A stretch of DNA of 51,876 nucleotides, filler included, from Bipalium vagum (lineage: Eukaryota), in assembly GCA_037834085.1 (NCBI GenBank). It is 3 parts of 3 records of this genome, joined end to end, with 100 filler letters (N's around TTAATTAATTAA, not from the genome) between each part and the next. Parts side by side here need not be neighbours in the genome. Positions count along the whole stretch, not along the records: positions 18,062 to 34,818 come from JBBMKC010095555.1; 2 more parts are not named here. One strand, given 5' to 3'. This document shows positions 17,858 through 34,818 of the stretch, one piece after another. A program made the translations under genes and the position numbers. Each line of letters begins with the position of its first letter. The stretch's first letter is position 1. A model generated the notes under the pieces. It worked only from the letters and a program-made list of their open reading frames with translations, did not search any database and had not been told where the DNA came from.

Positions 17858-18245
17858 CAATCCCCGCCAAAAGTCTTTGGCCATTTAAAATTCTAGAAAA
17901 AGCATTTATATGATTCTAGTCATTAATATTTATTAAGTACAAATGTAAAGAACGTTAACGANNNNNNNNNNNNNNNNNNNNNNNNNNNNNNNNNNNNNNN
18001 NNNNNTTAATTAATTAANNNNNNNNNNNNNNNNNNNNNNNNNNNNNNNNNNNNNNNNNNNNATAATTATAATAGAAGTAGTTTTATCAATATTATAAAAG
18101 ATGAAGAGAAAGTTGATAGAAAGGTATATGCGTTCATATTTTACAGACATAAAATGCTTTGAGGGAAGCTTGCAGAATCTTTGAAGTAGCAATGGATAAC
18201 ACCAAAACACAAACGAACGTGAAGATAGACATCTTTATCTCCTAG
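17858..18245 (+). mobile_element. Possible Tc1-like 5' end spanning the assembly gap
   Basis: TA-CAATCCCCGCCAAAAGTCTTTGGCC is a TIR-like start that truncates the mariner fragment. TNEREDRHL-like remnant after the gap. Confidence 0.45.
17962..18061. other. Assembly gap linker N44-TTAATTAATTAA-N44
   Basis: Exactly 100 nt, six-frame-stop spacer, identical to 34819-34918. Confidence 0.97.
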
Positions 18246-18599
18246 ATGTTCGAAGTCTCGAATTTTGCAATCAATAATATTAGTAAAGTTTTGTCTTGTC
18301 TACTTATTTCCCTTTTATATTTTTGTGGTCTGCTTTTATAAATAATTTTCTACTTATTTATTATTATTTGCATTTAATTTCTATTTATAAATATTTATTT
18401 TCTATATTTAGTAACTCATAATTTCTATTTTTATTTTATATTCAAATTTTTCTTTACATATTTTTTTTATTAATATTGATTAATAATATAAATAATAAAA
18501 TAATTATTATTATACTAATTTTGAAGTCTTTAATTTGATAATCCAATATAAAGTTTATACAGAAATTATAAAACACGGATCACAAAACATAAAAACAAA

Positions 18600-18920
18600 T
18601 AATTGTCAAAAAAGAGTCACAATGTCATCGAAACCCTTTCTAGAATTGGAATGAGGCCAAAATCTTGTAAACTGATTGTTTTTTCTACCAATATTGTCAG
18701 TTATATTTTGTATATTGGTAATATAATTACAAATCTAATCAATTAATATGAAAGTTCAATAAGGGTGTCCACTCAATATTTCTGTTTAATATGGGAATAA
18801 ATTCAATGTTGAATGAATTAGAAATTTATTGTGTGGTTGCACTATGATAAATGAAAGCAAACTGACGAACTAAAGGGATGAACAATGTAAGCTAGATTGC
18901 TGACTGAAAAAGATCACCTA
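18600..18920 (+). mobile_element. Highly decayed non-LTR (LINE) reverse transcriptase fragment
   Basis: VQ*GCPL..FLFN (QGCPLS.xLFN motif), preceded by IETLSRIGM and followed by a weak IAD*KR remnant in the YADD region. Confidence 0.45.
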
Positions 18921-19959
18921 ATTGAAAGATAGTCACTCCATCATGTCATCATTAATAAAGAACGAAAAAGACGTTTGTCTGAAACTTGCCCAATGTTTTA
19001 AGTTAGAAGTGAATTTTGAAGACCAAGTCAATCTTGGAGACTCAAAATGTATCGAAATTTCTGATATAAGAATATTTATTTACTATAGACACTACAAGCT
19101 GTTTTATATACAGTGTTAATAGTAAATAAAGTGATAATCATCAGCTGCTCCCCCAGTCACTAGTGGTTGTCAAAGTGCTTCATCTGCGACACCTGAGAGA
19201 GACCATAAAAGCAATTTAAGGGTCGAGACAAAGCACAATGGCTCATTAGTGAGATTAAATCGATCTCTATCCTCACTCCAGTCGACATCTGCCAGTGGGG
19301 ATAGGAAAATAAAGAAAAAAAAACCCACACACAATAATTACAAAATTACGTACAACTTATGTATAAAAGGTGGGTCAACAATAAAAGGATTTGTAGGATA
19401 AACTGTAAACATTGTAAAAGATTACTGTAAAATAAGCCCAAAAGGGTGGAAAACTCATGAAATTACAAATTGAATGCTTAGAAGAAAGTGCTAGAAGCTT
19501 TCTGACTTCAAAACTATCAACAAATCCATCAATCACACTTATAATCCATTCAAATAAATACCAGATATAGAAGCACATACAGTAAATTGGCATGTTTCAT
19601 GTCTGGTGCTCATTGTAAATTTTTAAATTAATTATAATTTAAAACACTAAATATAAATTAGTTAATTATTCTAAAATAAATTAGTTTTAATTCATGTACT
19701 TAACAAAAATTATATAAACTCATCACGTTTTCTTTCAAAAATTTCACCTGTCTAAGACTTTAGACGATGAGTCTATTAACATTTTTAATCGATTAATAAT
19801 TTTTCAAAATAATAGTACATTGTTGATTCTAAAATCAATTTTATAACTTTTAACCGATCTATAAAAAGCTGGGTGAGTATAGAGCTGAACTAAAGAAGAT
19901 AAATTCTATTGTAAAGCGAAAAACACAACACTATCAGAGCTAAAAACCAGTCCTAACAA

Positions 19960-20690
19960 GTAACACACGACCAAGAGGGGAAGCATGTTTAGAAAAGCCA
20001 AAAATGCGACAAAAGAACAGAAATGAAATGAAAAATAAAATGGAGTGCTGGACATGTCACAAAATGGGGCACATAAGCAGAGTCTGTATTATGAAAAAGA
20101 AACCGACTTATTTCGTTTCCAGAGTAGAAGGGCGCATGTGAAGACAATTCTCTTCAGTGAAGTGCAATCGTTGCGGCCTACATAGTCAATTGGATCATGT
20201 TTTTTGCTATACGAATATCGAAAGAAGACAAGATGATAGGAGAATGGCATAGAGGAACAGAAACAGCCAGTACCATCAGGTGCGTAACAGCAGGTATCTT
20301 AATATAATAGCTGAAGACGAAAGAGAACAAAACCTCTGTTTAGATTTCAGAAAGCTGAACCCCATCAGAGAAAGACAAGCTTTTCCGATTCCCATCATAG
20401 TACTTTCAGCTGTTGCAAGACAGGACAATGATAACACTGTCAAGATATTCCAAAACAATTGGATCTTAAAGTTCGGTGTGCCTAAAGAGATACACGCAGA
20501 TTGTGGAAAATGTTTTGAGTCCCAATAATTTAAAAGACTGGTAGCGGACGTGGGAGCAGACTTGATATTCTCGTACAATTATAGAGTATATAAATGCAAC
20601 CTTAAAGAATAGAAAGAATACTGATTGAGGCGAAATTTTACCAGAAATTGAATATAGTTTAAATGCATTACTACAGAAGACTATTCGAAT
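19960..20690 (+). mobile_element. Heavily deleted Gypsy remnant (gag zinc knuckle, RT and integrase pieces fused)
   Basis: CWTCHKMGHISRVC (CCHC); LCLDFRKLNPIRERQAFPIP (RT) joined directly to NNWILKFGVPKEIHADCGKCFES (integrase). Confidence 0.85.
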
Positions 20691-21371
20691 GTGTTATTAT
20701 TATTATTATTATTAAAATTTATTTTCAAAAAAGCTTAAGGAAATAATAATACAATAAAAGATAAAAACAATATATCAATGTAATTAGTTTAGTAAGTATC
20801 ATCAATTTTTGCATGAAGCCTTTCAAATTTCTCACCGTTAAATACACCTATATTTAAAATTATATTTGAAAATAAATATCAAATATCAAATATTTCCCTT
20901 TAAAATATTATTCAAATTTATACACATGTTTACAGATTAAATATTAGAAATGTGCAGTTTCCTGTTGCATTAAAACAAACTAAACAATTTAATATACTAT
21001 CAATATTTTTGTTAGCATAATAAAGGTTATCTGATCCTTGGCTTATATTCTAGAAGCAAATATTTTCAAATTTTGTTAAAATATTACTATTGTTAATTAA
21101 TTATTATTAAAAATAAATAAAAAAAATAATTCGTAAAATTATTTCAGTTATTTTCTGAGTACATAGAAATATGGTTTTAAACTTGTGTAATCTTTCCGAA
21201 ATTTTAAAAATATTATCTTAATTGGACATTTTTCTTTTTAAATTCTATGTTCATTCTTCCTATTTTTGACAGATGACGTTAAATGGACTCATTGTAATCC
21301 TTCTCTAAAGTGAGAAGGTGAATGTACTTTGATGCTTTGTGCTAGCCATTGTCGTTTCGTGGTCCTAGGTC

Positions 21372-22760
21372 ATAAGTTAATATTTATAAAAAAAATTGAA
21401 TTTCATATTGAAAAAAAATTATTAATTAGTTCATAAAAAATTATATAATTAATTCCTTATATACCCTGTCTTGAGAAATTTCCTTATCTTCACGTTTCTC
21501 TAGTTTCGTTTTCATATCTTGTTATTTAACTCATGTCTTCTGACATATATTTTCTAATTACCTTATACGGTCCAATATATCAATCTTATACTTTGTTTTT
21601 GATCTCTGGTCTTCCAACCACATATTCGATACTCAGTCTTCCGTTTCCATCTTTCTCATTCTGTTCCAAATTTCTCATTAAAATTTCCCTGCTAAAAACG
21701 ATTTCCACCGAAAATTCAACTTCCTGTACAATCTCTATCCAATCTGCTTGTTTCCCATTCTATAGCATCACATCAATCATATCACCAATTGGACGGAATT
21801 CACTTTCAGCTTGACCGTTTGTATTGTGATAATAGGAGGTCGAGAAAGATTTAAAGATTAAACCTTTTGAAAATTCTTTCAGCAATTTAAATTTTAAAAA
21901 TTTGTCCGCTTTAAAGATGAAATTCACTTGCAGCACTAAATTGTAATATTCATTTGTTCACCTAAAATCTCACCGATGTTTCATCTTTACGTTGATACAT
22001 ATTTGCTGAAATGATTTATCATTGCGAAGATATAGTTCTTCATTCCAACTTTTTCTTTAAAAAGGCCACGGATATCTACATAAATATCTACACATGATTT
22101 TTCAAACAGGAGACAGATGATTTAACATTTTTCCTTTCGTCACTTACAATTTCACAATTTTGATTCTCTGACATTGCTGGCAGAAGCTGACAAGTGCTTT
22201 CAGAACTTCTTTTAACCCTTGTAGTTCGCATAATCCTTTCACATACTGGCATGTCGTCTCCACAACCATATGAGCTAAGTGATTGTGAGTTTCCATATAA
22301 CCATTTCCTGACTTTAGGTTTCTTTTTATCTTTTCATTATCTTCCCTGAAAAAATTTGAATTTAATTTGATTTCCTTTGGTCTTAATATCATTTCTCTGT
22401 TTTCTGAAATGATAACTTCAACCTTTCTCCTAACTCTTCTGCTTTATCTTTTTTGCCGTGTATTTTACCTCAAAAGTCGGATCCAATAGTTTAACTATAA
22501 TTGCTTCTCTAAAATGCTTTCTAATGCCGGATAATTCGAAGAATGCTTGGCAGTCCTTCATAAAAATGTCAAAGTTATCGTATCTGGAGAAACTCTTCTG
22601 CGGGTACAGTTCGCAGAAAATATTCGAGTTGGTCTCCATCAGCCGCTACCATTTATTTAATATTTTAAAAATAATTTAAAATCTCACGGAAAAATTTTTA
22701 TTTTCATATTTAACAAAAAAAATTAATTAATAAAAAATTATGTAATTAATTTCTTTTATA
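21372..22760 (-). mobile_element. Internally deleted short-LTR Gypsy element (~1.4 kb)
   Basis: Diverged ~100-bp direct repeats (about 21372-21463 and 22652-22760), PBS-like TGGTAGCGG at 22651-22643, purine tract AAGACAGGG before the 3' LTR. gag N-terminus (SFSRYDNFDIFMKDCQAFF) and integrase HHCC (HNHLAH...CQQCQR) are present. Confidence 0.8.
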
Positions 22761-22872
22761 AGCGTCGACTGCATATGATACTGATAAACTTTATCTAGTG
22801 AAAGGTGAACATTTAACCAACTTTCCTGAATGATACTTTATATCGATTTTTTTGAGTTTTGATAAAATTTTA

Positions 22873-25315
22873 TTGGGTGTTCCGGAAAGTTCGTTCCGAA
22901 TTTTAATTAGAAATTAAAAAGTAAGACAATGCAATTTTGAATATATTTATTAAAATACATATTTTCTATTTTTTTCCAAAACCTTTTTCCATCTATCAAG
23001 TAAGTTGAATATTTCATCCTTCCAGAATTTCTTAGATTTTTCATCCAAAAAATTATCCACGTGACTTTTGATATCGTCCAAGGAGACAACGTTTTTTCCA
23101 TTAAGTGAATTTTTCAATGACATAAATAAATGGAAATCGGTGGGTGCAAGGTCTGGTGAATATGGCGGAGTAGGTAGCATTTCCCAATCCATCTCCAAAC
23201 ACTTTTTCTTGGTGGTCAAAGACACATGCGGTCGCGCATTATCTTGATAAAACACTACTGCCTTCCGATTCACCAGTCACTCATCTCCTGTCATCAATTG
23301 CTTCAAAAAATTGTGTTACTTTGTTGCATTTATAATTTAAGCTGCAGATGTTAATGCGATTCATCAGGTTATTTTCACTTAAAACATGTGGAATCCATAC
23401 GTCTAAACGATTAATAAAACCAAGCTTCAATAAATTCTCGTGTATGGTGGATTAGGGGATACCTAATATCTCTTCTAATTCACGTGTAGTATGACGTGAA
23501 TTTTTCTCAAGAAGCGCAGTAATTTGTTCATAATCAACGGTTCTCGGTCTCCCCTAGCGTTCTTGCTCTTCAAGGCTAAAATCACCATCTTTAAATCTTG
23601 CAAACTACTTTCGAACAGCTCTATCAGATAATGCTAATATGGGGACTCCCAGGCAACCAAGCAAACTCCCAACATTCCCAAGAGATGAGCAAACTCTCAG
23701 TATTGCCAGGAGATGAAAGATAAACCTTTTCGTGAATCTAGACATTTTTGTGATCTTTCATTATCTTTTGCATGAAAAAAAAATATTGTAAATAAAGTTT
23801 TTATTATGCATGTGTATAAAATATTTGTAAAAATTAATTCAAATTATTATTGATAAGTCCTGAAACTATTAAAATATAAAATAAATAAATAAGATGTAAA
23901 TAATATTTGAAAAAACTAATAAATCATAAAATATAAAAAATATAAATAATATTTGAAAAAACTAATATTTAAATTAGAATAATTCTAAATTTGGAAAGTC
24001 CAGTAAAAATAGTTACCAAAAATAGAAATAATAATCTAAAATCGAATAAATAATAAAAAAAATAGTGTATTAAAAATTAAAATTAGTAAATTTAGATTAC
24101 TAAAAATAATTAGAAGATAGAAAATTTTATACAAATTCAGTCGTCTGTAATCAAAAAGGCAGAAGAAAATAAATAAAGAAAAAACCAGAAATTTCTTGAC
24201 GTTAACACGCAAAAAACAGAATTACCCGTCAGTAACAGGAATCAGTCATTCTCAAACAATATTTTCGAGACTAAGATATCAAGGAGCACAGACACTTGAT
24301 TAGATATATCGTCGTCTGACAGCAATCGGAAACGCAAGAAGAAACGAAAAAACTTATATAAAGCAGGCAAAACTTACATTCAAAAAGAAGGACAATCGAC
24401 TAAAAAAGAGTTACACTTCGACAAAGACGCTAGACAAAATACGATTCGCAAGTTACCTTACATCTACAAAGAAACGACGAGAGGAGATTTAACCATCTAC
24501 CAAGCAACGACAAACAGAATCAAGAGATCGCCAAGGATCCAACATTAGAGGAATTCGACAGTTACCTACCGGTGGTCATAAAAAAACTATATATTTCGAT
24601 TCAGAAGTATCACAGTTTTATTAAGTAATTGTAGTAATTGTTTTTATATTTTAAATTTAACAATATCAATTTGATTTAAAATTGACTATTGTAAATATCT
24701 TTAAAATTCAACGGAATTAAAAAATTGGATAGATCCGCAATTGTTGTTCCATCATCAAAATACTTTTTGTTTGTTCTTCTTTTATAATCTTTTTTGCTTT
24801 CTCAACGCCAAGTAGGGCGGATAAGCGCTTTTTCAAGTCGAGGGCTCTTTAAGCTAAGACTGCAAAGAGTTTAACTATTATTCTAATTTATTCCGGGACT
24901 TATCATTAATAATATTGATTTTTGTTCAACCAATTATAAAAACTTTTGAATCGTTATAAAAATAAAAGTATTAAACTCATATTAATTTGTTTTGATTTGA
25001 CTTAGTGATAAAGACTTTTATTGAAAATTACATTTATATTTTTTATCCATTCACACAGTTACTCAGTCGATTTAGAATAACCATACGTAAACGAGCATTA
25101 AATGGCGAGAATGTATTTTATTTGTATCCATCTTTGAATTTGTTCAATAATTTAGATCAATATTTAAACAAATACCTTTTCATTATTTAATAAAAAAAGT
25201 ATCTTTTACCATTCAGAATATATATAATTATGCCATGTTTTCTGTCTATCTATTATAATAAAACTGTTTTAATTATGTATATTAAAAATCGGAAGGAACT
25301 TTCCGGACAACCCAA
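22873..25315 (-). mobile_element. Degenerate mariner interrupted by a ~1.45-kb insertion
   Basis: TIRs TTGGGT(GT/TG)TCCGGAAAGTTC with TA flanks. Start MDTNKIHSRHLML near 25131; WIPHVL, QDNARPH and PPYSPDLAPTDFHLF motifs within 22950-23635. Confidence 0.92.
23640..25085 (+). mobile_element. Non-coding insertion in mariner, probable solo-LTR-like repeat
   Basis: Interrupts the transposase; begins TGGGGACTCCC like 42692 (TGCGGAGACTCCC) and shares motif order with it. Right end uncertain. Confidence 0.5.
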
Positions 25316-26648
25316 TATATTCATATTTCTTTACGCTGACTATTTTATTAATTTTTTTGTTTTACCATAACAATATATAAGATGAATATTTGGCTTTAAA
25401 TATGATTTGATAATATATTTTATTTATATTTGACTTATTTTTATTATTAATAATTAATATCCAATTTAATGATTAATTATTTAAAACATCAGATGATAAA
25501 CTTTACATTATATGAATTTATATTGATTTTCACATTACCATTTCAATAAAAATTTCAACTCCAATAAACATAATTTTTACTTTTAGGCTCGGTTTACTTA
25601 TTCCATTTCTAACCTGCTTTTTGGATTTCCATTGCAATTTGAATATAATATAAATTAATAATTTATTATTATATATAAAAATATTAAAACAATTTAATGT
25701 AAATATTTTCATTTCAACTAGAAACTATTTCAAAATGGTGATTTATTTTAGCCAATAAAACTTTTGTTAGGAAAAATAATTTTGTATTACATTTTAAGAT
25801 CATTTCATATTTCTTAATTAACATTTCTAAGAAAAAAAAATAATAAATTTAGACAAAATTAAATAATTTTCTAAAACAATGATGTGTAAAATAGAAATAA
25901 TTTCCATTTTTAGTAAAAAAACTTTCAGTTAAAATTTTAATCTCTGAAATTAGATTAATATAGTTATTTTTATTATTCCAAAAAATTAAGTAGATTAGAT
26001 TGTATGCCTTATATTTTATTTTTAATCATAATTCCTATAATATTATAAAAAAATTAATAAACATTAAGAAATACATTTTAATTAAAAAAATAATAAAATA
26101 ATTACCTAAAAGAAAAAGGAAATCAAAATAATTCTTGTATATTTTATGGTAAAATTGTAATTCAATATTACTTATTGATAATTACCTAAAATGAAATGAG
26201 AGTTTATTAGATATTTTTTCTAAAATTTTTCTAATTAATAATTTTTTCTAAGTAAAATATGTACTATATATATTATCAAAAATAATTAAATTTCCGTACT
26301 TTATAATTTAAATTTAATATAATTAAAGCATATTAATAAAAATTACTATTGGAATATTCCGCAAATTAAATAAATTAAATAAATAAATAACCAAGTTGAA
26401 TATAATTTTGATTTTCATCGACAATCTTCTCGAAATTAAAAAATGTTTAATTAATGAATTTCTTTATTTATCTAGTTTAAAAACTAAAATGGCAAAACAA
26501 AATAATCAATTAAATCACAGAATGATTTCGCGATTTGAGATTAAATTCTTTATGTTAAAATTTAATTTTTAAGAGCAGAACAAAGTTTTTTTAATTTAAA
26601 TAAGGTTCAAATCAAGTCTTTTATTAAAATGTAATACAAATTATAATT

Positions 26649-26843
26649 TTATCCAATTAATCCAGTGTACCAATCTCTTTTGAAGATATTTCTTCTCAAA
26701 TTAAATTCATCATGAACCGGCTCTTTATATATCCTATAGCTTTTGAGTGGGAAAAATTGGCTTTCCACAATTATTTTATCAAGAAGAATAATGAATACCA
26801 AACAAATAAACAGAGCTTGACAATATGGATTTCTATTTCCCAT
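26649..26843 (-). CDS. Putative neuropeptide prohormone (64 aa) yielding DWYTGLI-amide
   Basis: Hydrophobic signal peptide (ALFICLVFIILL...VES), dibasic RR and KR sites, terminal Gly directly before TAA, AATAAA about 23 nt downstream (26625-26620), and a T-rich tract plus AG just before the ATG. Confidence 0.75.
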   Translation of the reverse strand: MGNRNPYCQALFICLVFIILLDKIIVESQFFPLKSYRIYKEPVHDEFNLRRNIFKRDWYTGLIG

Positions 26844-28061
26844 TCTTATAAAATAAATAAATTAATATGTTAATTTATTTTTTATGAACTTACTTTTAAA
26901 TTTACCCAACAATTAAATAAATACTGATAACGTTTCTCTCATTTATATATTTATTTGTTCGTTTTATTTATTCAACCAATGAGAATTTAATGAAATAAAC
27001 GATAATCTCATTATAAAATTAGGCCTGTAGTGATAATTCTATTAATTATTATTTAATAAGTTAATAACGATTGAGCTGAAATTTGAAATATTCACACTGA
27101 TATTTTATTAGAAATATTTTATATTATGATTTGGATAAAAATTTTATTAAAAATCCAAATAGTTGCTCACTTGATAAAAGTAATAAAATAATGATTTCAC
27201 TGGATTGTGGGTAATAATGGTTATTGTTTTTAAACTATTATTTAATATCGTACTTTACGATGATTATTTACACTGAAGTGAAATAATTGAATTTTATTGA
27301 TCAAGTTAAAACTGTTTTTCTAAATTTGATTGTTTTTGTTTGATAATAATATTTCATATTTTAAACATTTTTGATAAGAGGCTGGAAAGAACGATATTGA
27401 ATAAATATTTGAAATTAAAAAAACATGATTTTGTAAAATTGTTGATAAAACCAATTTTTGAGATCCTCACTAACCGATAAAAAGATTTACTTTACAGAGA
27501 AAATAAAATAATTAAAACCTATCAATAAAAATTGTAAATGTGAATTTTAGACATTTGTCAATGAAAACAATATGTTTTTTAAAAACATTTTTTTTATTTA
27601 AGATAAATCAAAAAATGTAAATTCTAAATGTGATGTAGTCCATTCTGCACAGTTTTTATCTGAAAAGAAATTTGGAAAAAAAATAAAATTTAGCCAATGA
27701 TTCCGAAAGTAAAAAATCAGTATTTTTATTATTGTTGTTAATTATTCTCAAATGATATCATGGGTTATATAATTTTTCTTTATTTTAATTAGATAAAAAT
27801 AATAAATATGTTCAAAAATTAAAATTCTTTTTTTTTGAAAAAAATTTTTTAAAAATATAAGATTCCGTATATTAAAAAATTTTTTTTATAATTATAATCA
27901 TAAATATTAAAATAATATTTTCCTTTTAATTGAATGAATCAATATATTAATTAAAGAATACATTAATTATCCACTGATTGATACTTTTTTCCATTTTGTG
28001 AATCATGTAGTGAATCATCAAAACTTTTTTTTTGCTCATTGCCAAAATTTCGATATATACC

Positions 28062-29060
28062 TTAGGTTGTCCCATTATAAGTGACCATCTTTGTATTCAT
28101 AATTTCTGTCTATACAAATTAAATGTGAACAGTAACATATAATAAATATATATCATTTTAAACATTATTTCATGCTCTGTCTATCTGTATATGAATTATT
28201 TATTGTATTATTAAATAATTTGTTACATATTTTAGATGATTGGTCGAAAAATTATAATTGCACTACTATTTTTCTCTTTAAAGAGGGTTTCAATGCGGCT
28301 CACGAGGTCCTTGAAATTTGTTCATATGAACTCCAATTCAGTAAGATGGTTTTTCGAAAATTCTGGTCTAGCGACCATAGATTGAAAAATAAATATTTTT
28401 GACATCCATAAATTAATCTTGATGAAGCTATTCGTATCAAAGCATTAAAAATGCCACATGTATCTTTTTGTACAATGCAGGTTACATATGGCTCTTCTAA
28501 TTCAATCTGTCATGTGCGAAAAATAGACTTCGTCCTGAAACGACCACAACAAGATCCTCAAGATTTGGCAATTTCTCAAATTAAAACATGAATGGCTATC
28601 AGCCATCAAACTTAATCTATTCAGTAAGAAAGTGTTGCTTTCTGTCAGGAAAAATTTTTAATGAGCTATTCATTTTTACTTCATCTAAGTAAGTAGATCA
28701 GTTGACACCAAGCTTTACTGTGAGCATCTTGACCGTGTTAATGAGAAATTTATCAGTCATTATCCCAATTTAGTTAATAGAAAGAGTGTATTAATGCGAC
28801 ATGATAATTCACCAGCTTGCGAAACGAAATTATAGAAAAAATACGAAATCTAGAATGAGTGGAAGTCTTACCAGATCAACATTACAGCCCTGACTGTGCC
28901 CCATTCGATTATGGGTTGTTCCGAGCAATGCAACACTTCAAAAAATGAGCTTCAACAATGTTGAGAAGGTCAAAGTGACATATTTTGACCTTTTTGCTTC
29001 CAAACCCAAGGATTGGTACTTTTACCTAGTTGAAAATTAGCAGCTAGATGGATAAACCTG
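28062..29060 (+). mobile_element. Decayed mariner
   Basis: TIR-like TTAGGTTGTCCCATTATAAGTGAC; LFKEGFNAA HTH; LVNRKSVLMRHDN; YSPDCAPFDYGLFRAMQH. Confidence 0.82.
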
Positions 29061-29895
29061 TTATCTGATATACACATTCATTGAACTTTGACAGATTTAA
29101 ATATATTGAATTAAGCAACTACCTTTGCAAAAAAGCATCTAAGTAGAAATAAATAAATTTAATTGAACCATTTCACTAGAATAAATTGCATTTTAATTTT
29201 AAGTATTGAATCTCCTTCCAAAAGTGGTGGTTATCTATAAAATTCACAATATATGCATTCTTGTTGTATTTGTTTTGTCAGATATCTTTTTGGGAAATTC
29301 ATTTTTCAAGAATACTGTGTCAATTATAATCGAGATAACAATAAGAGAATCTGTCTAGGAATTTTTTGAGACCGGAAACTAAAATTATAATTCTACAATA
29401 TGTCAATTAAAGAACATAGAAGAACTATATTCATAAGTCAATAAATATAAGTCACAGTGTATATTATATTATATTACTGACTTAATTTTAAATCTTGAAG
29501 TGATAATTATAAGTGATATTTATAATGATTTGTTAAAATAAAATATGGTCAAATGGTTAATTTGAAAGTATAACGAAGTGGAACAATGCAGTCCATGAAA
29601 GGCATCTGAAATATATACAAATTACAAAAATATTGTATACCAACACACAAAACATATGGCTTCACATGTAATTTTATATCTGGGAAAAAATAATATTTTA
29701 TGAGATATATTGCCTTGGGTCTCATCGATTTGTTTCTATGGATATAAAATTCATAGAACGGGAAATATTCATTGATGTGGAGGACATTAAAAGCCTCTAT
29801 GACTCAAATTTATCTAGGAAATAATTATAATAAGAAAATAATATATTAATAAGTTAGATGACGTCAGTAATAAAAAAAATAATATTTTTAGTATT

Positions 29896-30878
29896 ATAAT
29901 GGGTACAAATAAATAATGCTGATTTATTTAAAATAGATTTAGTGAGATATCGATAAGTATTGTGATTTTAAATATAAATCAATTTGTTTGAATTAATATG
30001 GTAATCATTTGAATTTTCATATGTTAATAATTTCAATTTTTAGATAAAAATATGTTAACATTTACGCCAAGAAAAGAACACTTGCGGGAAGTTCTCATTC
30101 ATTACTTTATGATGAACAAAAATGTCACAGAAAGCTGCAGGATATTATGTGATGTTTATGAAAAACATGTAGTATCTCAGGAGACATTCGAGCGTTTATT
30201 TCACTGCTTCAGAAGTAATGATTTTAGTGTAGAGAATAAAGAACGCCCAGCCCGTCCTTCCAAATTTGAAAACCTCAATCCAAAATATGTTGTTTTTATG
30301 CGAATTATGTTTATTATTTCTTTTTCTAAATAATATTATATGGTCAAATGAGTTCTTTTGTCACAAAAATTGTTCTTATGCAGCTAATGACCACTGATGT
30401 CAGGTTAAGTATTTCAGTTGGGTAGAATATTGGACTGATAACTTGAATATCGAGGGTCAGTTCTCAAAGCTAATTTAATTAATTTCAATAGGTTTTTAAC
30501 GATTTTTATTTATTGTTTACAATATAAATCAATGTTATTATTCTCTTACTTCATTATAATAGATTGAATAATCAATTAATCAATTTTTTTTATTAAAATT
30601 TACTTATTGACGTTTCTCCATCTGATTATTACTTGTTCAGATCGATGGCGCATTCTCTTCGAACAGTGCTTCAAAACTTTGAAGATGTCACATATTGGAT
30701 TGATAAGTGGATCATATCGAAACACGAAAAGTTTTTCTTTGAGGGCATTAATAAATTACGAGAAAATGAGCTAAAGTTGTAGATATCGATGGAAATTACT
30801 TGGATTATAAAATTTTGTTTTGTTTTGCTAGAATAAATGATTATCTTAAAAATCGCAATTTTCTACTTGTTCAACTAA
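29896..30878 (+). mobile_element. Internally deleted Mos1-like mariner with unrelated filler at about 30272-30600
   Basis: MLTFTPRKEHLREVLIHYF...NDFSVENKERPARPSKFE; 3' remnant DVSPSDYYLFRSMAHSL; eroded TIRs. Confidence 0.82.
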
Positions 30879-31739
30879 TAAGGATAATCATGAAAAATCG
30901 ATCGACAATGTAATTTCCGTTATTTAAGGACCTTCTCTCGTCCTTCTACTTGTTATTTTTATGTTTCTGGAAAAAAATACCAATAGGTGCAAGAAATTCT
31001 GTTTGTTATCAAATTGGCGCGGCATTTCAAAGCTTTCAAATTTAAATAAAATGGAATAAGTCAAGAACATCACTGTGATTTAGAAAAACAGAAAAAGGTC
31101 TTTCAAATAAATAATATGATACCATGAAACAAGTTATAAAATAATATTAGTTAAAAACTAATATTTATCTAACAAAATTTTTTGTAATTTTATTTAACTG
31201 GTTTTTTATTGACGTATGGCTTATTATTTATATAAGAGTGCATTAGAATTAAGAACATCGCTATAATGAGTGAAGAGCACATTGCGACCTGAGCTAAAAA
31301 TATTGCCTACATATTTCAGAATAAATTTGTTGGCGAATAATGGATTTCCTAGAACTTACATCTCTGCAAACTCAACAGAGGTTCGGTCATTGAAGAACAT
31401 TGCTCAATTATAAAAGAAAAATAAAGAATCCTGGGAAAATAATTGTAAGATGGATCATTGGTTCTGAAAAAAGAAAGTTATGGATATTGATAATAATAAA
31501 CCCTTAGTATTAAACGTAGTATTAACATTATTTTTTCTTGGAAATCATTGACGTTTGGCTCTAATAATTTATTGTAGGGGTCGGAGTTTGTGTTGATTCA
31601 TTATAAAGATAAAACTTATTAGTAAAATATTATAGAATTCATCTGAGATTTCTGAGACAAATTTGAAACTACACTTTTTGATTAATTATTTTAAATTTCT
31701 TATAAAAATTAAAGTAAATTTCTTTCCATCACGCTAAAT

Positions 31740-32270
31740 GTTAATTTGCCTTAAGCAATGAATAAGTTGTCCAGTTGGTTTTTATTTCATAACCCTGGGC
31801 CGTTTGGTTGCCAACTAATTGTTTCCAATACTTATATCAAATAAATGAAACTTGAGAAGTGATTGATGTTAATTATTTCATTACCTATGAAACTATTCAA
31901 TATTTTCATTCTGGCCAGTTTTTACAACAATATTGAAAGCTGAGACTGGATAATATTTTATTTTCTCAATTATTTAATTAACTTTTCAATCTTTTCTCTC
32001 TAAAACTATATAAAAATACTTACCCGGAGCCCAGCGATTATCAATATGATCCGTATACAATTACCGTACTGAGAGTCAGGTTAATTTATTGCTCCTAAAG
32101 ATCAGATATATAATTTTATAATTACAATTTCTAAATTAATATTTATGTTGATTTCTTCAATTTTAAATGTATTAAAAATTCAGAAAATTAATAATAAATC
32201 AATAACTTTTTTTTTCCACTGGAGGTAGCTTCTCAAATAAATATAATTTATCATCCATATGCCAATATAT
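31740..32270 (-). pseudogene. Decayed intron-containing gene or spliced non-coding RNA (exon-like 32094-32024, 31945-31885, 31830-~31750)
   Basis: Canonical sites TTTAG|, |GTAAGT, TCCAG|, |GTAATG, ATAAG| with 78- and 54-nt spacers; the joined frame contains stops. Confidence 0.35.
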
Positions 32271-33119
32271 ATAAATATTGAAAAGATATTATGGGAAATT
32301 ATAATTTCATTTCGTTTCATTTTCGATTTTTTTTAATTAATTATATTCTAAGTGGCATAAAAAGATTGTTTTAATTTGAGACTTGAGACAATGTTTGTTG
32401 GGTTTCAAAGGATGAAGGATGTTATGTCATTTTTGATTCATTGAAAAAAAATAATTATAGGTTGCTGCATAATTATTCGTCGTTTGTTTAAAAATATTAT
32501 CTATTATTGATTATCATTGATTAGTGTTAACAATATTCGTCTATTATCAGGATAAAACATTCTTCTCAAAAATTATTTGCACATTCGTTATATCATTCTT
32601 TACAACTACGAGACAGAATGGAAGAAAGCATGATCATTTCGGGACCTCAACAAAGTTTTCGGCAAAGGAACACTTAGTGAAAGTCAATGCCGAGATAGTT
32701 TCCGTGGTTAATTATGTAACAATTTAATAATAATCTCTTGTTGAAAATGGTAACTAATTTGTAAGAGCGTTAGGAAGAATATTTTGAGGTGTCAGTTATT
32801 ATTGGTATTATTAACATACCTTAGACTATAAACTTAAAATACAAACTAAGTACTGCTTTACAAAAAATTGATCTGAAAAATGATCGTTGGTATTATCGAA
32901 ATAAGGAATAATTTTCTTGTTACGGATAGGCTTGTGATTAAAATTATTTTTGTAGGTGAGGATATATAGTATCAAGTTGCCGGATTGGAAATCTTACTTA
33001 TATAACTTGTAAATTGCTTTGTTTAAATAATTTGTTTATCTGATATATTTGTATTTATTTTAAAGCACTTTTTGATATAAAGTTTAATATATATATTTAA
33101 ATTTTTAGAATATTTTAGA

Positions 33120-34100
33120 TCAAACATGAATGATACAAAATATGGTGTACGTACGTGCCTGCTGGATGATTTCTAATTAGAAAAATGCACCTGAATACCA
33201 CCGCAGTTCGTCCAGAGTATTCATCATCAGAATGCTCCTTCATTAGGGCAATACCACCGTTGGTTTCAGCGCTTCAAAATGAAATCCTGGAAGACAATGT
33301 GCATGGGAAACGTCCAGGGATTTTTGGTAATAAGGCAATAAGGACTACGTTGAATTGGATCCAATGCAAACTACAAGATAAGGTGCGAAGAAGGTTGGAT
33401 ATCATCATTCAACCATTGTTGGTCACTTTCACACAATTGGAAAGATGAACCGTTGCAGAAAATGGGCGCTCAGCAAATAAAGCAACACAATTTACCATGG
33501 CCGGTATTCTTCTTCGAAGTGTCAACTCAAAGGGTTTTTCAATTCTATCATCACATCGGATAAAAAATGGATGTATTATGAATACAATACCTCAAAGCGG
33601 CGGTGGTTAAGTACTGATCCGCCCCCGAAACCATTTCTCAAAAGGAATATTCATGGTAAAAAGAAGTTACTTTGCGTCAGTTGGAATAGTCAGAGATTGA
33701 TCTATTTTGATGTGCTTGAAAAGAGTCAGGCGGTTAACACGGATCTGTAGCGCGTGGATCAAACGCTAAGCATCCAAAGCAACAATACAAAAGTAGTGCG
33801 GATCCTCCATGATAACGCCAAACTAACATTGCGAAAGCCTCCCAGAAGAAAATTGAAGAATTAAGGTGGTACGTTCTTCCTCTAATACCATACAGCCTGG
33901 ATATTGTGCCGGTCCATGCAGAATGTATTGGCTGGAAAAAATTTTAAAACCAAAACAAGACTGAAATTTGGATGTCAGAAGTCCAATTTCTTTAAGAATG
34001 GCATTTATTCTTTACGTGAACATTGGGAACAGGTCATTTATCTATGTAGAAATTATATTTTGGATCAATATATCTTATTGTTGTTTTTATAATAAATATT
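33120..34100 (+). mobile_element. Decayed near-full-length mariner transposase (TIR-like TTATAGGTTGCTGCATAA upstream near 32455)
   Basis: RWFQRFK, WMYYEYNTSKRRWL, IHGKKKLLCVSWN, ILHDNAK, WYVLPLIPYSLDI motifs. Confidence 0.85.
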
Positions 34101-34384
34101 TTTTTTGAAAAAATTCAACATTTCTAATCCAAAACTTGGTGGTTTCACGAAAAATATATGATGTGATACATAAACGTTTGTTCAGATCATCATTAGTTTC
34201 TGACAAGGAAATTCACTATTGACCGTAACTTAACTACTGAATTAAATTGATATTATTTTTTGACTATCAACGAAGCTTATTGTAATAGTGTATCATTTTT
34301 ATAAGAATTTTCCTGAACCACAGATACCACAAACTTCATGAGAACACAGTATGATCTTGGTTAATAATTTGTCACATATTATTA

Positions 34385-34818
34385 TTAGGTTGAGGCATAA
34401 TGTTTTGCCGAAAAAAATGAAATAAGTTAAAATCGAAAATTTTATTTTTTAATAAAACATTCATCAGTTATATAATTACCATTGTTCTCGACAATTATTT
34501 GCCATCTCTGAGGCAGTTTCATGATTCCATCCTGGTAGAACTTTTGGGGTTTTGATTCAAAGAACTGAGACAGTGCAGTTTTGCAACCTTCAAACCGCTT
34601 CCCACTAAGAGAGTTCTGCAGCGATCGAAACAGATAATAATCCGAAGGTGCTATGTCTGGAGAATATGGAGGGTTTATAAGAAGATCCCATCCAAAGTCA
34701 TTCAGTTTCTGTAGAGTTCGAAAAGACTTGTGTGGTCTTGTATTGTCCTGTTGAAATATTACTTTATTTCTATTGACCAAAGCGGGACGTTTTTCTTCAA
34801 GAGCAGCTTTCAGATTGT
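34385..34818 (-). mobile_element. Mariner 3' end with intact C-terminal frame, cut by the gap
   Basis: QQDNTRPH...PPYSPDIAPSDYYLFRSLQN; TIR TA-TTAGGTTGAGGCATAATG. Confidence 0.92.

What the first reader, a model, noticed from the sequence alone, without database searches (positions are those of the whole stretch)
26649..26843. Small candidate neuropeptide gene encoding DWYTGLI-amide
Seen: a 64-aa ORF in a gene-poor, extremely AT-rich stretch, with signal peptide | QFFPLKSYRIYKEPVHDEFNL RR NIF KR DWYTGLI G stop, followed by AATAAA. Established: KR cleavage by prohormone convertases plus a terminal Gly (PAM/PHM-PAL substrate) gives amidated peptides, and an N-terminal Gln can cyclise to pyroGlu. 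Inference: the mature peptide is DWYTGLI-NH2. Its aromatic-x-G-L-hydrophobic-amide end resembles tachykinin FxGLM-amide and flatworm GLI/GMI-amide peptides. I do not recognise this exact peptide, and genes this small are often missed by annotation.
Basis: partly seen in the sequence, partly recalled or inferred. Interest (0 to 1): 0.78.

Follow-up and report, generated by a model that had tools for sequence, protein, structure and literature searches.

The report
Unverified small peptide-hormone-like ORF
The 64-codon reading frame exists and looks exactly like a small amidated-peptide precursor, but no transcript or relative could be found, and frames like it arise by chance in such AT-rich DNA, so it remains an unproven candidate gene.

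Summary
On the minus strand, 26843..26649 is an ATG-to-TAA frame of 64 codons. It has a rule-conforming signal peptide, then RR, NIF, KR, DWYTGLI, Gly and stop, with AATAAA 24 nt downstream. It lies in 2.7 kb of 17% GC DNA between transposon remnants. It coincides with the only significant GC-richer island there (31% GC, p about 0.01).

No independent evidence shows that it is a gene:
- Two protein searches (a word search of 5.8 billion proteins and HMMER against 1.84 billion) found no relative. The single HMMER hit is a translated tandem repeat.
- The literature search and a metagenome scan for the back-translated peptide found no precursor.

Simulations put chance frames of this architecture at about 1e-4 to 2e-3 per 16.7 kb. 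That is several to dozens per animal genome, similar to or more than the real genes of this shape.

My estimate is about 0.5 for a chance frame and about 0.4 for a real orphan amidated-peptide precursor. The tachykinin resemblance fails on the sequence. The GLI-amide ending does occur in planarian NPP-2 and in molluscan LASGLI-amides, but that is only three shared residues.

The parts
26649..26843 (-). 64-codon ORF, ATG to TAA, with the full candidate precursor layout
26760..26843 (-). Residues 1-28, signal-peptide-like. The n-region contains Arg4, the hydrophobic core spans 12 residues (10-21), and the c-region ends V-E-S, so cleavage would expose Gln29.
   Evidence: Rule-based test (passes the 'strict' filter). 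SignalP was not available.
26697..26759 (-). Residues 29-49, a 21-residue spacer or possible pyroGlu peptide ending before RR
   Evidence: Sequence; inference
26691..26696 (-). RR dibasic site
26676..26681 (-). KR dibasic site, preceded by the tripeptide NIF (26682-26690)
26655..26675 (-). DWYTGLI, the putative mature heptapeptide
26652..26654 (-). Terminal Gly (possible amide donor), followed by TAA at 26649-26651
26620..26625 (-). AATAAA, 24 nt after the stop. By chance it is found within 60 nt of 17-28% of simulated ORFs.
26941..26948 (-). TATATAAA, about 100 nt upstream of the ATG, with ATTGG at 26976-26980. Both are common by chance in this composition (24-36%).
26845..26893 (-). Possible 49-nt 5'-UTR intron: GTAAGT, then a T-rich tract, then AG one base before the ATG. 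Seen by eye and untested.
   Evidence: inference
26662..26845 (.). GC-richer island (31% GC against a 17% background). It is the top-scoring segment of the 2.7-kb AT-rich stretch.
   Evidence: P = 0.007 by shuffling, 0.017 by Markov model
25316..28061 (.). AT-rich segment without recognisable transposon, bounded by two mariner-end-like sequences (TTrGGTTGTCC)
   Evidence: The boundaries were judged by eye and are only weakly supported.

Best explanation
Slightly more likely than not, this is a fortuitous open frame and not a gene. A 184-bp patch of somewhat GC-richer DNA sits in a 17% GC, transposon-flanked stretch. It carries fewer stop codons, so frames stay open there. Two codon-aligned frames, one on each strand, are each open for 70 codons. 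DNA this AT-rich also favours Phe, Ile, Leu, Lys and AGA-Arg codons, which readily gives hydrophobic N-termini and dibasic pairs. The terminal Gly is the one rare element. On this reading nothing is transcribed or processed.

Shown: the frame, its motifs, the composition, the chance rates, and the absence of any detectable relative. Inferred: that it is not expressed.
For: 1. Frame length is ordinary for the region. Six other frames of 56-70 codons lie within 2.3 kb.
2. The antisense frame 26661-26870 is equally open.
3. Simulated DNA of this composition gives 0.0007-0.002 ORFs per 16.7 kb with a signal-like start plus [KR][KR]-x(3-20)-G-stop. With stricter signal rules the rate is about 0.0001. 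That means several to roughly 100 per 400-800 Mb genome.
4. The GC contrast is not rare among ORFs in real, heterogeneous DNA. Of the 35 ORFs of at least 40 codons in this piece, 3 have a contrast of at least 0.115 and 8 have at least 0.10.
5. No relative was found by the word search of 5.8 billion proteins, by HMMER against 1.84 billion representatives (the only hit is a translated 55-bp tandem repeat), by Pfam, in papers or in metagenomes.
6. The language-model recognition score is 1989, below the 2300 that 91% of proteins from known families reach.
7. The promoter-like and poly(A)-like hexamers occur by chance beside 17-36% of simulated ORFs.
Against: The GC island is significant within its 2.7-kb background (P about 0.007-0.017). 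It shows no similarity to any transposon protein on either strand and is not repeated in the piece.

The N-terminus passes standard signal-peptide rules that only 0.25-0.5% of chance ORFs pass. The start has A at -3 and G at +4, and there is no upstream ATG for about 100 nt.

The nearest named clusters by protein-language-model features are all short neuropeptide precursors: PDH, DH31, NPF, PrRP, NPS and GnRH, at 0.80-0.85. A neighbouring chance ORF scored 1028 for recognition and matched only hypothetical proteins.

Validated planarian prohormones have the same ending. Smed-npp-3 ends KR, seven residues, G, stop.

The absence of relatives is weak evidence, because neither this genome nor its close relatives appear to be in the searched collections.
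Confidence: 0.5

Rival explanations
1. This is a real, very small gene for a secreted, amidated peptide precursor, either a lineage-restricted orphan neuropeptide or a peptide hormone. The signal peptide would be removed after Ser28. Prohormone convertase would cut at RR50-51 and KR55-56, and carboxypeptidase would trim the basic residues. Peptidylglycine alpha-amidating monooxygenase would then convert DWYTGLI-Gly into DWYTGLI-NH2. The 21-residue N-terminal piece might cyclise to pyroGlu. Every processing step is inferred from established prohormone biochemistry. None was shown here.
For: The full architecture lies in one frame and passes the strict signal-peptide rules. The CDS coincides with a significant GC island, as coding exons do in AT-rich genomes. 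The start has A-3/G+4 with no upstream ATG, TATA-like and ATTGG motifs lie upstream, and AATAAA lies 24 nt after the stop. The nearest named ESM clusters are neuropeptide precursors, and recognition is twice that of a neighbouring chance ORF. MS-validated planarian prohormones npp-3 and npp-4 end in KR-peptide-G-stop. GLI-amide and WY(S)GY-amide peptides exist in planarians (npp-2, npp-8).
Against: No relative turned up anywhere. Chance frames of this type are expected at genome scale in numbers equal to or above the real ones. The ESM recognition score is below the usual level for real proteins. The organism is unidentified, so the presence of PC2 and PAM is assumed. The setting is transposon-laden and no neighbouring host gene is visible.
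Confidence: 0.4
2. The GC island is a relic of something else, such as an unrecognised decayed transposon, a pseudogene fragment, or an exon of a larger or non-peptide gene. On this reading the precursor-like frame is incidental to it.
For: The piece is a mosaic of decayed mariner and LTR-element fragments at about 30% GC, the same as the island. Both strands are open in the same codon register.
Against: Neither long frame matches Pfam or any protein. There is no DNA repeat or second copy in the piece. The frame begins with ATG six codons after a stop and ends in a stop, so it is not an internal exon.
Confidence: 0.08

Closest known systems
Planarian prohormones Smed-npp-3 and Smed-npp-4 (Collins et al. 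2010, PMC2953531, supplementary file 6)
   Same: These are short precursors of about 85-110 aa with a signal peptide. Their last peptide is preceded by KR and followed by Gly and then the stop codon. In npp-3 that last peptide is also seven residues long, and it was confirmed by MS as amidated.
   Different: Those precursors carry two to five related peptide copies. This frame has one. There is no sequence similarity, their expression was shown, and here it was not.
Smed-npp-2, (R)GLIamide repeated seven times (PMC2953531, supplementary file 6)
   Same: Predicted C-terminal -GLI-amide.
   Different: npp-2 has seven tandem KRRGLIGKR units and a Cys-rich N-terminal domain. The candidate has one heptapeptide and shares only G-L-I-G.
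Molluscan LASGLV/LASGLI-amide peptides (scallop, PMC5996578)
   Same: The ending -(S/N)GLI-amide compares with -TGLI-amide here.
   Different: The molluscan precursors are multi-copy with a conserved SLASGLI core. No wider similarity exists, and the taxon of this window is unknown.
Tachykinins (FxGLM-amide) and protostome tachykinin-related peptides (FxGxR-amide)
   Same: An aromatic residue five positions from an amidated end, followed by x-G-L.
   Different: The aromatic residue is Tyr, not Phe, and the last residue is Ile, not Met or Arg. There is no Pfam tachykinin match. The defining motif is not met.

Membership tests
Amidated neuropeptide / peptide-hormone precursor (generic class) | Cleavable N-terminal signal peptide | tested here: met
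   A rule-based check was passed: positive n-region, 12-residue hydrophobic core, and V and S at -3 and -1. Only 0.25-0.5% of simulated ORFs pass it. SignalP itself was not available.
Amidated neuropeptide / peptide-hormone precursor (generic class) | Dibasic convertase site immediately before the peptide, and Gly immediately after it | tested here: met
   KR-DWYTGLI-G-stop, read directly.
Amidated neuropeptide / peptide-hormone precursor (generic class) | The gene is transcribed, in neurons or secretory cells | not testable with these tools
Amidated neuropeptide / peptide-hormone precursor (generic class) | Mature peptide and its processing sites conserved in related species | tested here: inconclusive
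   No relative was found among 5.8 billion proteins, 1.84 billion representatives or JGI metagenomes. However, genomes of the organism's relatives do not seem to be in these collections.
Amidated neuropeptide / peptide-hormone precursor (generic class) | The host encodes PC2-type convertase and PAM | not testable with these tools
   The organism was not identified and only this 16.7-kb piece is available.
Tachykinin family | C-terminal F-x-G-L-M-NH2 (or F-x-G-x-R-NH2 in protostomes) | tested here: not met
   The end is Y-T-G-L-I. There is no Pfam match.
Flatworm NPP-2 ((R)GLIamide) family | Tandem KRRGLIGKR repeats after a Cys-rich N-terminal domain | tested here: not met
   The candidate has a single copy and no Cys-rich domain. 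Only GLIG is shared.
Lophotrochozoan LASGLV/I-amide family | Many copies of a peptide with the xSLASGL(V/I)-amide core | tested here: not met
   Only -GLI-Gly is shared, in a single copy.

The most novel reading that the evidence does not exclude
The frame is a real, previously unannotated, single-exon gene for an orphan amidated heptapeptide, DWYTGLI-NH2. It may also yield an N-terminal pyroGlu peptide. No detectable relative exists in any searched collection, so it would be a lineage-restricted neuropeptide or peptide hormone.
Probability: 0.38. Interest if true: 0.45.

Novelty: not a real feature. Interest (0 to 1): 0.3.

Why it matters
If real, it would add one lineage-specific amidated peptide to an invertebrate's signalling repertoire. 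It would also show that genes of about 300 nt in AT-rich, transposon-filled DNA escape annotation. That would be useful for receptor deorphanisation but would not change any concept. If it is chance, it is a worked example of why pattern-only prohormone prediction in AT-rich genomes needs transcript or conservation filters. Here the expected chance yield per genome is as large as the expected true yield.

Tried and rejected
1. HMMER hit P0001 (E = 3.4e-4). Rejected: it is the translation of a 55-bp tandem repeat on a 934-bp metagenome contig. Its score is summed over three repeat copies of about 26 bits each, and there is no DNA similarity.
2. Back-translated DWYTGLIG in JGI metagenomes. There were 13 hits. 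All lie inside high-GC bacterial proteins or out of frame, and none is precursor-like.
3. Exact-protein look-ups for the ORF and for a mariner ORF found nothing.
4. Rfam and tRNA scan found nothing.
5. Literature searches for the peptide and for precursor fragments found nothing relevant.
6. Transposon-relic idea for the island. Pfam and the word search on the antisense frame and self-BLAST and repeat searches gave no support.
7. Organism identification. The best named mariner hits are ants, bees and a spider at 60-65% identity. CpG observed/expected is 0.88. A search for the ITR strings in papers found nothing. This remains unresolved, so 'flatworm' is unproven.
8. Mariner identity of 28136-28399. 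Not confirmed by Pfam or by pairwise comparison.
Those places were sent to no search tool afterwards. Local scripts read the whole piece on the closed machine, and the places were masked or left out in every later script that read that part of the piece.

Full report
**What is there.** On the minus strand an ATG at 26843 opens a 64-codon frame that ends with TAA at 26651-26649. The product has this layout:
- a nine-residue n-region containing Arg4
- a 12-residue uncharged hydrophobic core (residues 10-21)
- a c-region ending V-E-S
- Gln29 and a 21-residue spacer
- RR, the tripeptide NIF, and KR
- DWYTGLI, Gly, and the stop

AATAAA lies 24 nt after the stop.

**Setting.** The usable piece (18062-34818) is 27.5% GC with CpG observed/expected of 0.88. 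It contains no recognisable host gene. What it does contain is decayed transposon material:
- mariner fragments: HTH_48 at 30052-30330, Transposase_1 at 33481-33747, and DDE-type C-terminal parts at 22950-23273 and 34445-34816
- LTR-retroelement fragments: integrase H2C2 at 22147-22392 and a weak zinc knuckle at 19944-20138

The ORF lies in a 2.7-kb stretch (about 25316-28061) of 17.4% GC. That stretch is bounded by two short mariner-end-like sequences sharing TTrGGTTGTCC. This boundary reading is by eye and only weakly supported. Rfam and tRNA scans found nothing. The organism was not identified. The best named relatives of the mariner fragment are from ants, bees and a spider at 60-65% identity, which says little because mariners move between phyla.

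**Is it more than chance?**
- *Frame length:* no. Six other stop-to-stop frames of 56-70 codons lie within 25190-27480. One of them is the codon-aligned antisense frame 26661-26870.
- *Motifs:* these are rarer. In order-3 Markov simulations trained on the piece or on the local AT-rich DNA, ORFs of 40-200 codons number 13-24 per 16.7 kb. Of these, 3.5-4.8% have a crude hydrophobic start, 0.25-0.5% pass standard signal-peptide rules, and 0.1-0.2% end in [KR][KR]-x(3-20)-Gly-stop.
- *Expected chance count:* combining these gives 0.0007-0.002 (crude) or about 0.0001 (strict) per piece. For an animal genome of a few hundred Mb that is several to roughly one hundred chance examples. It compares with perhaps a handful of true single-exon precursors that end in Gly-stop. 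The motif pattern alone therefore leaves the odds between about even and 1:15 against.

**Composition.** The ORF is 29.7% GC against 18% in its 200-bp flanks. A maximal-segment scan of the 2.7-kb stretch puts the top island at 26662-26845, almost exactly the ORF. P is 0.007 by shuffling and 0.017 by Markov model. In homogeneous simulated DNA, chance ORFs of this size exceed their flanks by only 1.4 ± 4% GC.

Real DNA is patchy, however. In this piece 3 of 35 ORFs of at least 40 codons show a contrast of at least 0.115, and 8 of 35 show at least 0.10. An open frame is also expected to end where AT-rich DNA, and with it stop codons, resumes. I count the island as moderate support for a coding exon, with a likelihood ratio of roughly 3-5.

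The island is not a recognisable transposon relic. Neither long frame matches Pfam or any protein. The DNA is unique within the piece.

**Expression signals.** Several features would fit a roughly 300-nt mRNA:
- A at -3 and G at +4 around the ATG
- no upstream ATG for about 100 nt
- TATATAAA at 26948-26941 and ATTGG at 26980-26976
- AATAAA at 26625-26620
- a GTAAGT...AG pair that could be a 49-nt 5'-UTR intron (26893-26845)

In this composition the Kozak pair, a TATA-like hexamer, a CCAAT/ATTGG box and AATAAA occur beside 10-12%, 26-36%, 24% and 17-28% of simulated ORFs respectively. I also picked these features after seeing the sequence. Together they add little.

**External evidence.** Only one public run holds this DNA. 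It dates from 2024, its kind is unknown, and it is not recorded as RNA.

Protein searches gave the following:
- The exact protein is not on record.
- The word-indexed search of 5.8 billion proteins found nothing.
- HMMER against 1.84 billion representatives gave one hit at E = 3.4e-4. It is a frame through a 55-bp tandem repeat on a 934-bp metagenome contig. Its score is the sum of three repeat copies of about 26 bits each, and there is no DNA similarity. I treat it as spurious.
- A scan of JGI metagenomes for back-translated DWYTGLIG found 13 sites. All are inside high-GC bacterial proteins or out of frame.
- No paper in the library contains the peptide or fragments of the precursor. It is also absent from the planarian prohormone catalogue of Collins et al..

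The absence of relatives counts only weakly against a gene. Other copies of this genome's own mariner families are also missing from the collections, which implies that neither this organism nor its close kin is represented.

**Protein-language-model view.** The ESM Atlas features place the 64 residues nearest, among named clusters, to short neuropeptide precursors. These are pigment-dispersing hormone, DH31, NPF, PrRP, neuropeptide S and GnRH, at 0.80-0.85. All are below the tool's 0.9 lead level. Recognition is 1989, below the 2300 that 91% of proteins from known families reach. A neighbouring chance ORF (25533-25712, minus strand) scored 1028 and matched only hypothetical proteins at no more than 0.77. 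This confirms that the architecture looks like a precursor. It does not show that the gene is real, because a chance frame with the same motifs would look the same. It is also a single control.

**Comparison with known peptides.**
- *Tachykinins:* the similarity fails on the defining motif. The end is Y-T-G-L-I, against F-x-G-L-M or F-x-G-x-R.
- *GLI-amide endings:* these are real. Planarian Smed-npp-2 encodes (R)GLIamide seven times, and scallop LASGLI-amide peptides end the same way. Both are multi-copy precursors and share only three or four residues with this one.
- *Closest architecture:* planarian npp-3 and npp-4, whose last peptide is KR-peptide-Gly-stop. In npp-3 that peptide is also seven residues and was confirmed by MS as amidated.
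- *npp-8:* its peptides end in WYSGY-amide, which recalls the WYTG here. That is a four-residue resemblance I could not test.

None of this establishes family membership.

**Verdict.** I combined the base rate (about 1:1 to 1:15, with a middle value near 1:4), the GC island (about 3-5 fold for), the start and UTR signals (about 2 fold for), the lack of any relative (about 2 fold against) and the sub-threshold recognition score (neutral to 2 fold against). This gives roughly 0.4 that the frame is a real secreted amidated-peptide precursor and roughly 0.5 that it is a chance frame in a GC-richer patch. The remainder goes to an unrecognised relic or part of another gene. All processing steps (signal peptidase, convertase, carboxypeptidase, PAM, glutaminyl cyclase) are inferred from general prohormone biochemistry, and none is shown. 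The decisive tests are stranded RNA reads over 26600-26920 and the state of the frame in related species. Neither could be run here.

Noticed in passing
window 26661-26870 (+): The antisense frame, in the same codon register as the candidate, is also open for 70 codons (ATG ORF 26712-26873, 53 aa). The sense frame uses only one TTA and no CTA or TCA codons. It has no Pfam or protein match.
   Followed up: yes
window 25284-25315 (-) and 28062-28090 (+): Two sequences beginning TTrGGTTGTCC, each next to TA-rich DNA, face away from the AT-rich stretch. They look like mariner terminal repeats and would make 25316-28061 the DNA between two insertions. They share only about 12 nt, and the adjacent frame 28136-28399 was not confirmed as mariner.
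   Followed up: partly
window 22950-23451 (-), 30031-30779 (+), 33481-34089 (+), 34445-34816 (-): At least four decayed mariner transposase copies or fragments lie in 16.7 kb (HTH_48, Transposase_1 and DDE_3 matches). The best named relatives are in ants, bees and a spider at 60-65% identity.
   Followed up: partly
window 19944-22443: There are remnants of an LTR (gypsy-like) retroelement on both strands: a weak CCHC zinc knuckle at 19944-20138 (+), integrase-like pieces at 20253-20525 (+), and an H2C2 integrase domain at 22147-22392 (-). All are broken by stops.
   Followed up: no
window 26845-26893 (-): A consensus donor GTAAGT is followed by a T-rich tract and an AG that ends one base before the ATG. 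This would be a 49-nt intron in the 5' UTR if the frame is transcribed. GTAAGT is expected by chance in only about 4% of 150-nt upstream regions of this composition (my arithmetic).
   Followed up: no
L001 1-934 (JGI metagenome contig): The contig is made of a 155-bp repeat and a 55-bp tandem repeat. A gene caller read a 186-aa 'protein' (P0001) through the repeats. Such repeat translations can give misleading multi-stretch HMMER E-values.
   Followed up: yes
L002-L014 (metagenome contigs): The octapeptide DWYTGLIG occurs inside several unrelated high-GC bacterial proteins, so the string alone is not diagnostic of anything.
   Followed up: yes
window 23874-23911: This low-complexity AT-rich stretch tripped the read tool's filter. 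It was left alone afterwards.
   Followed up: no
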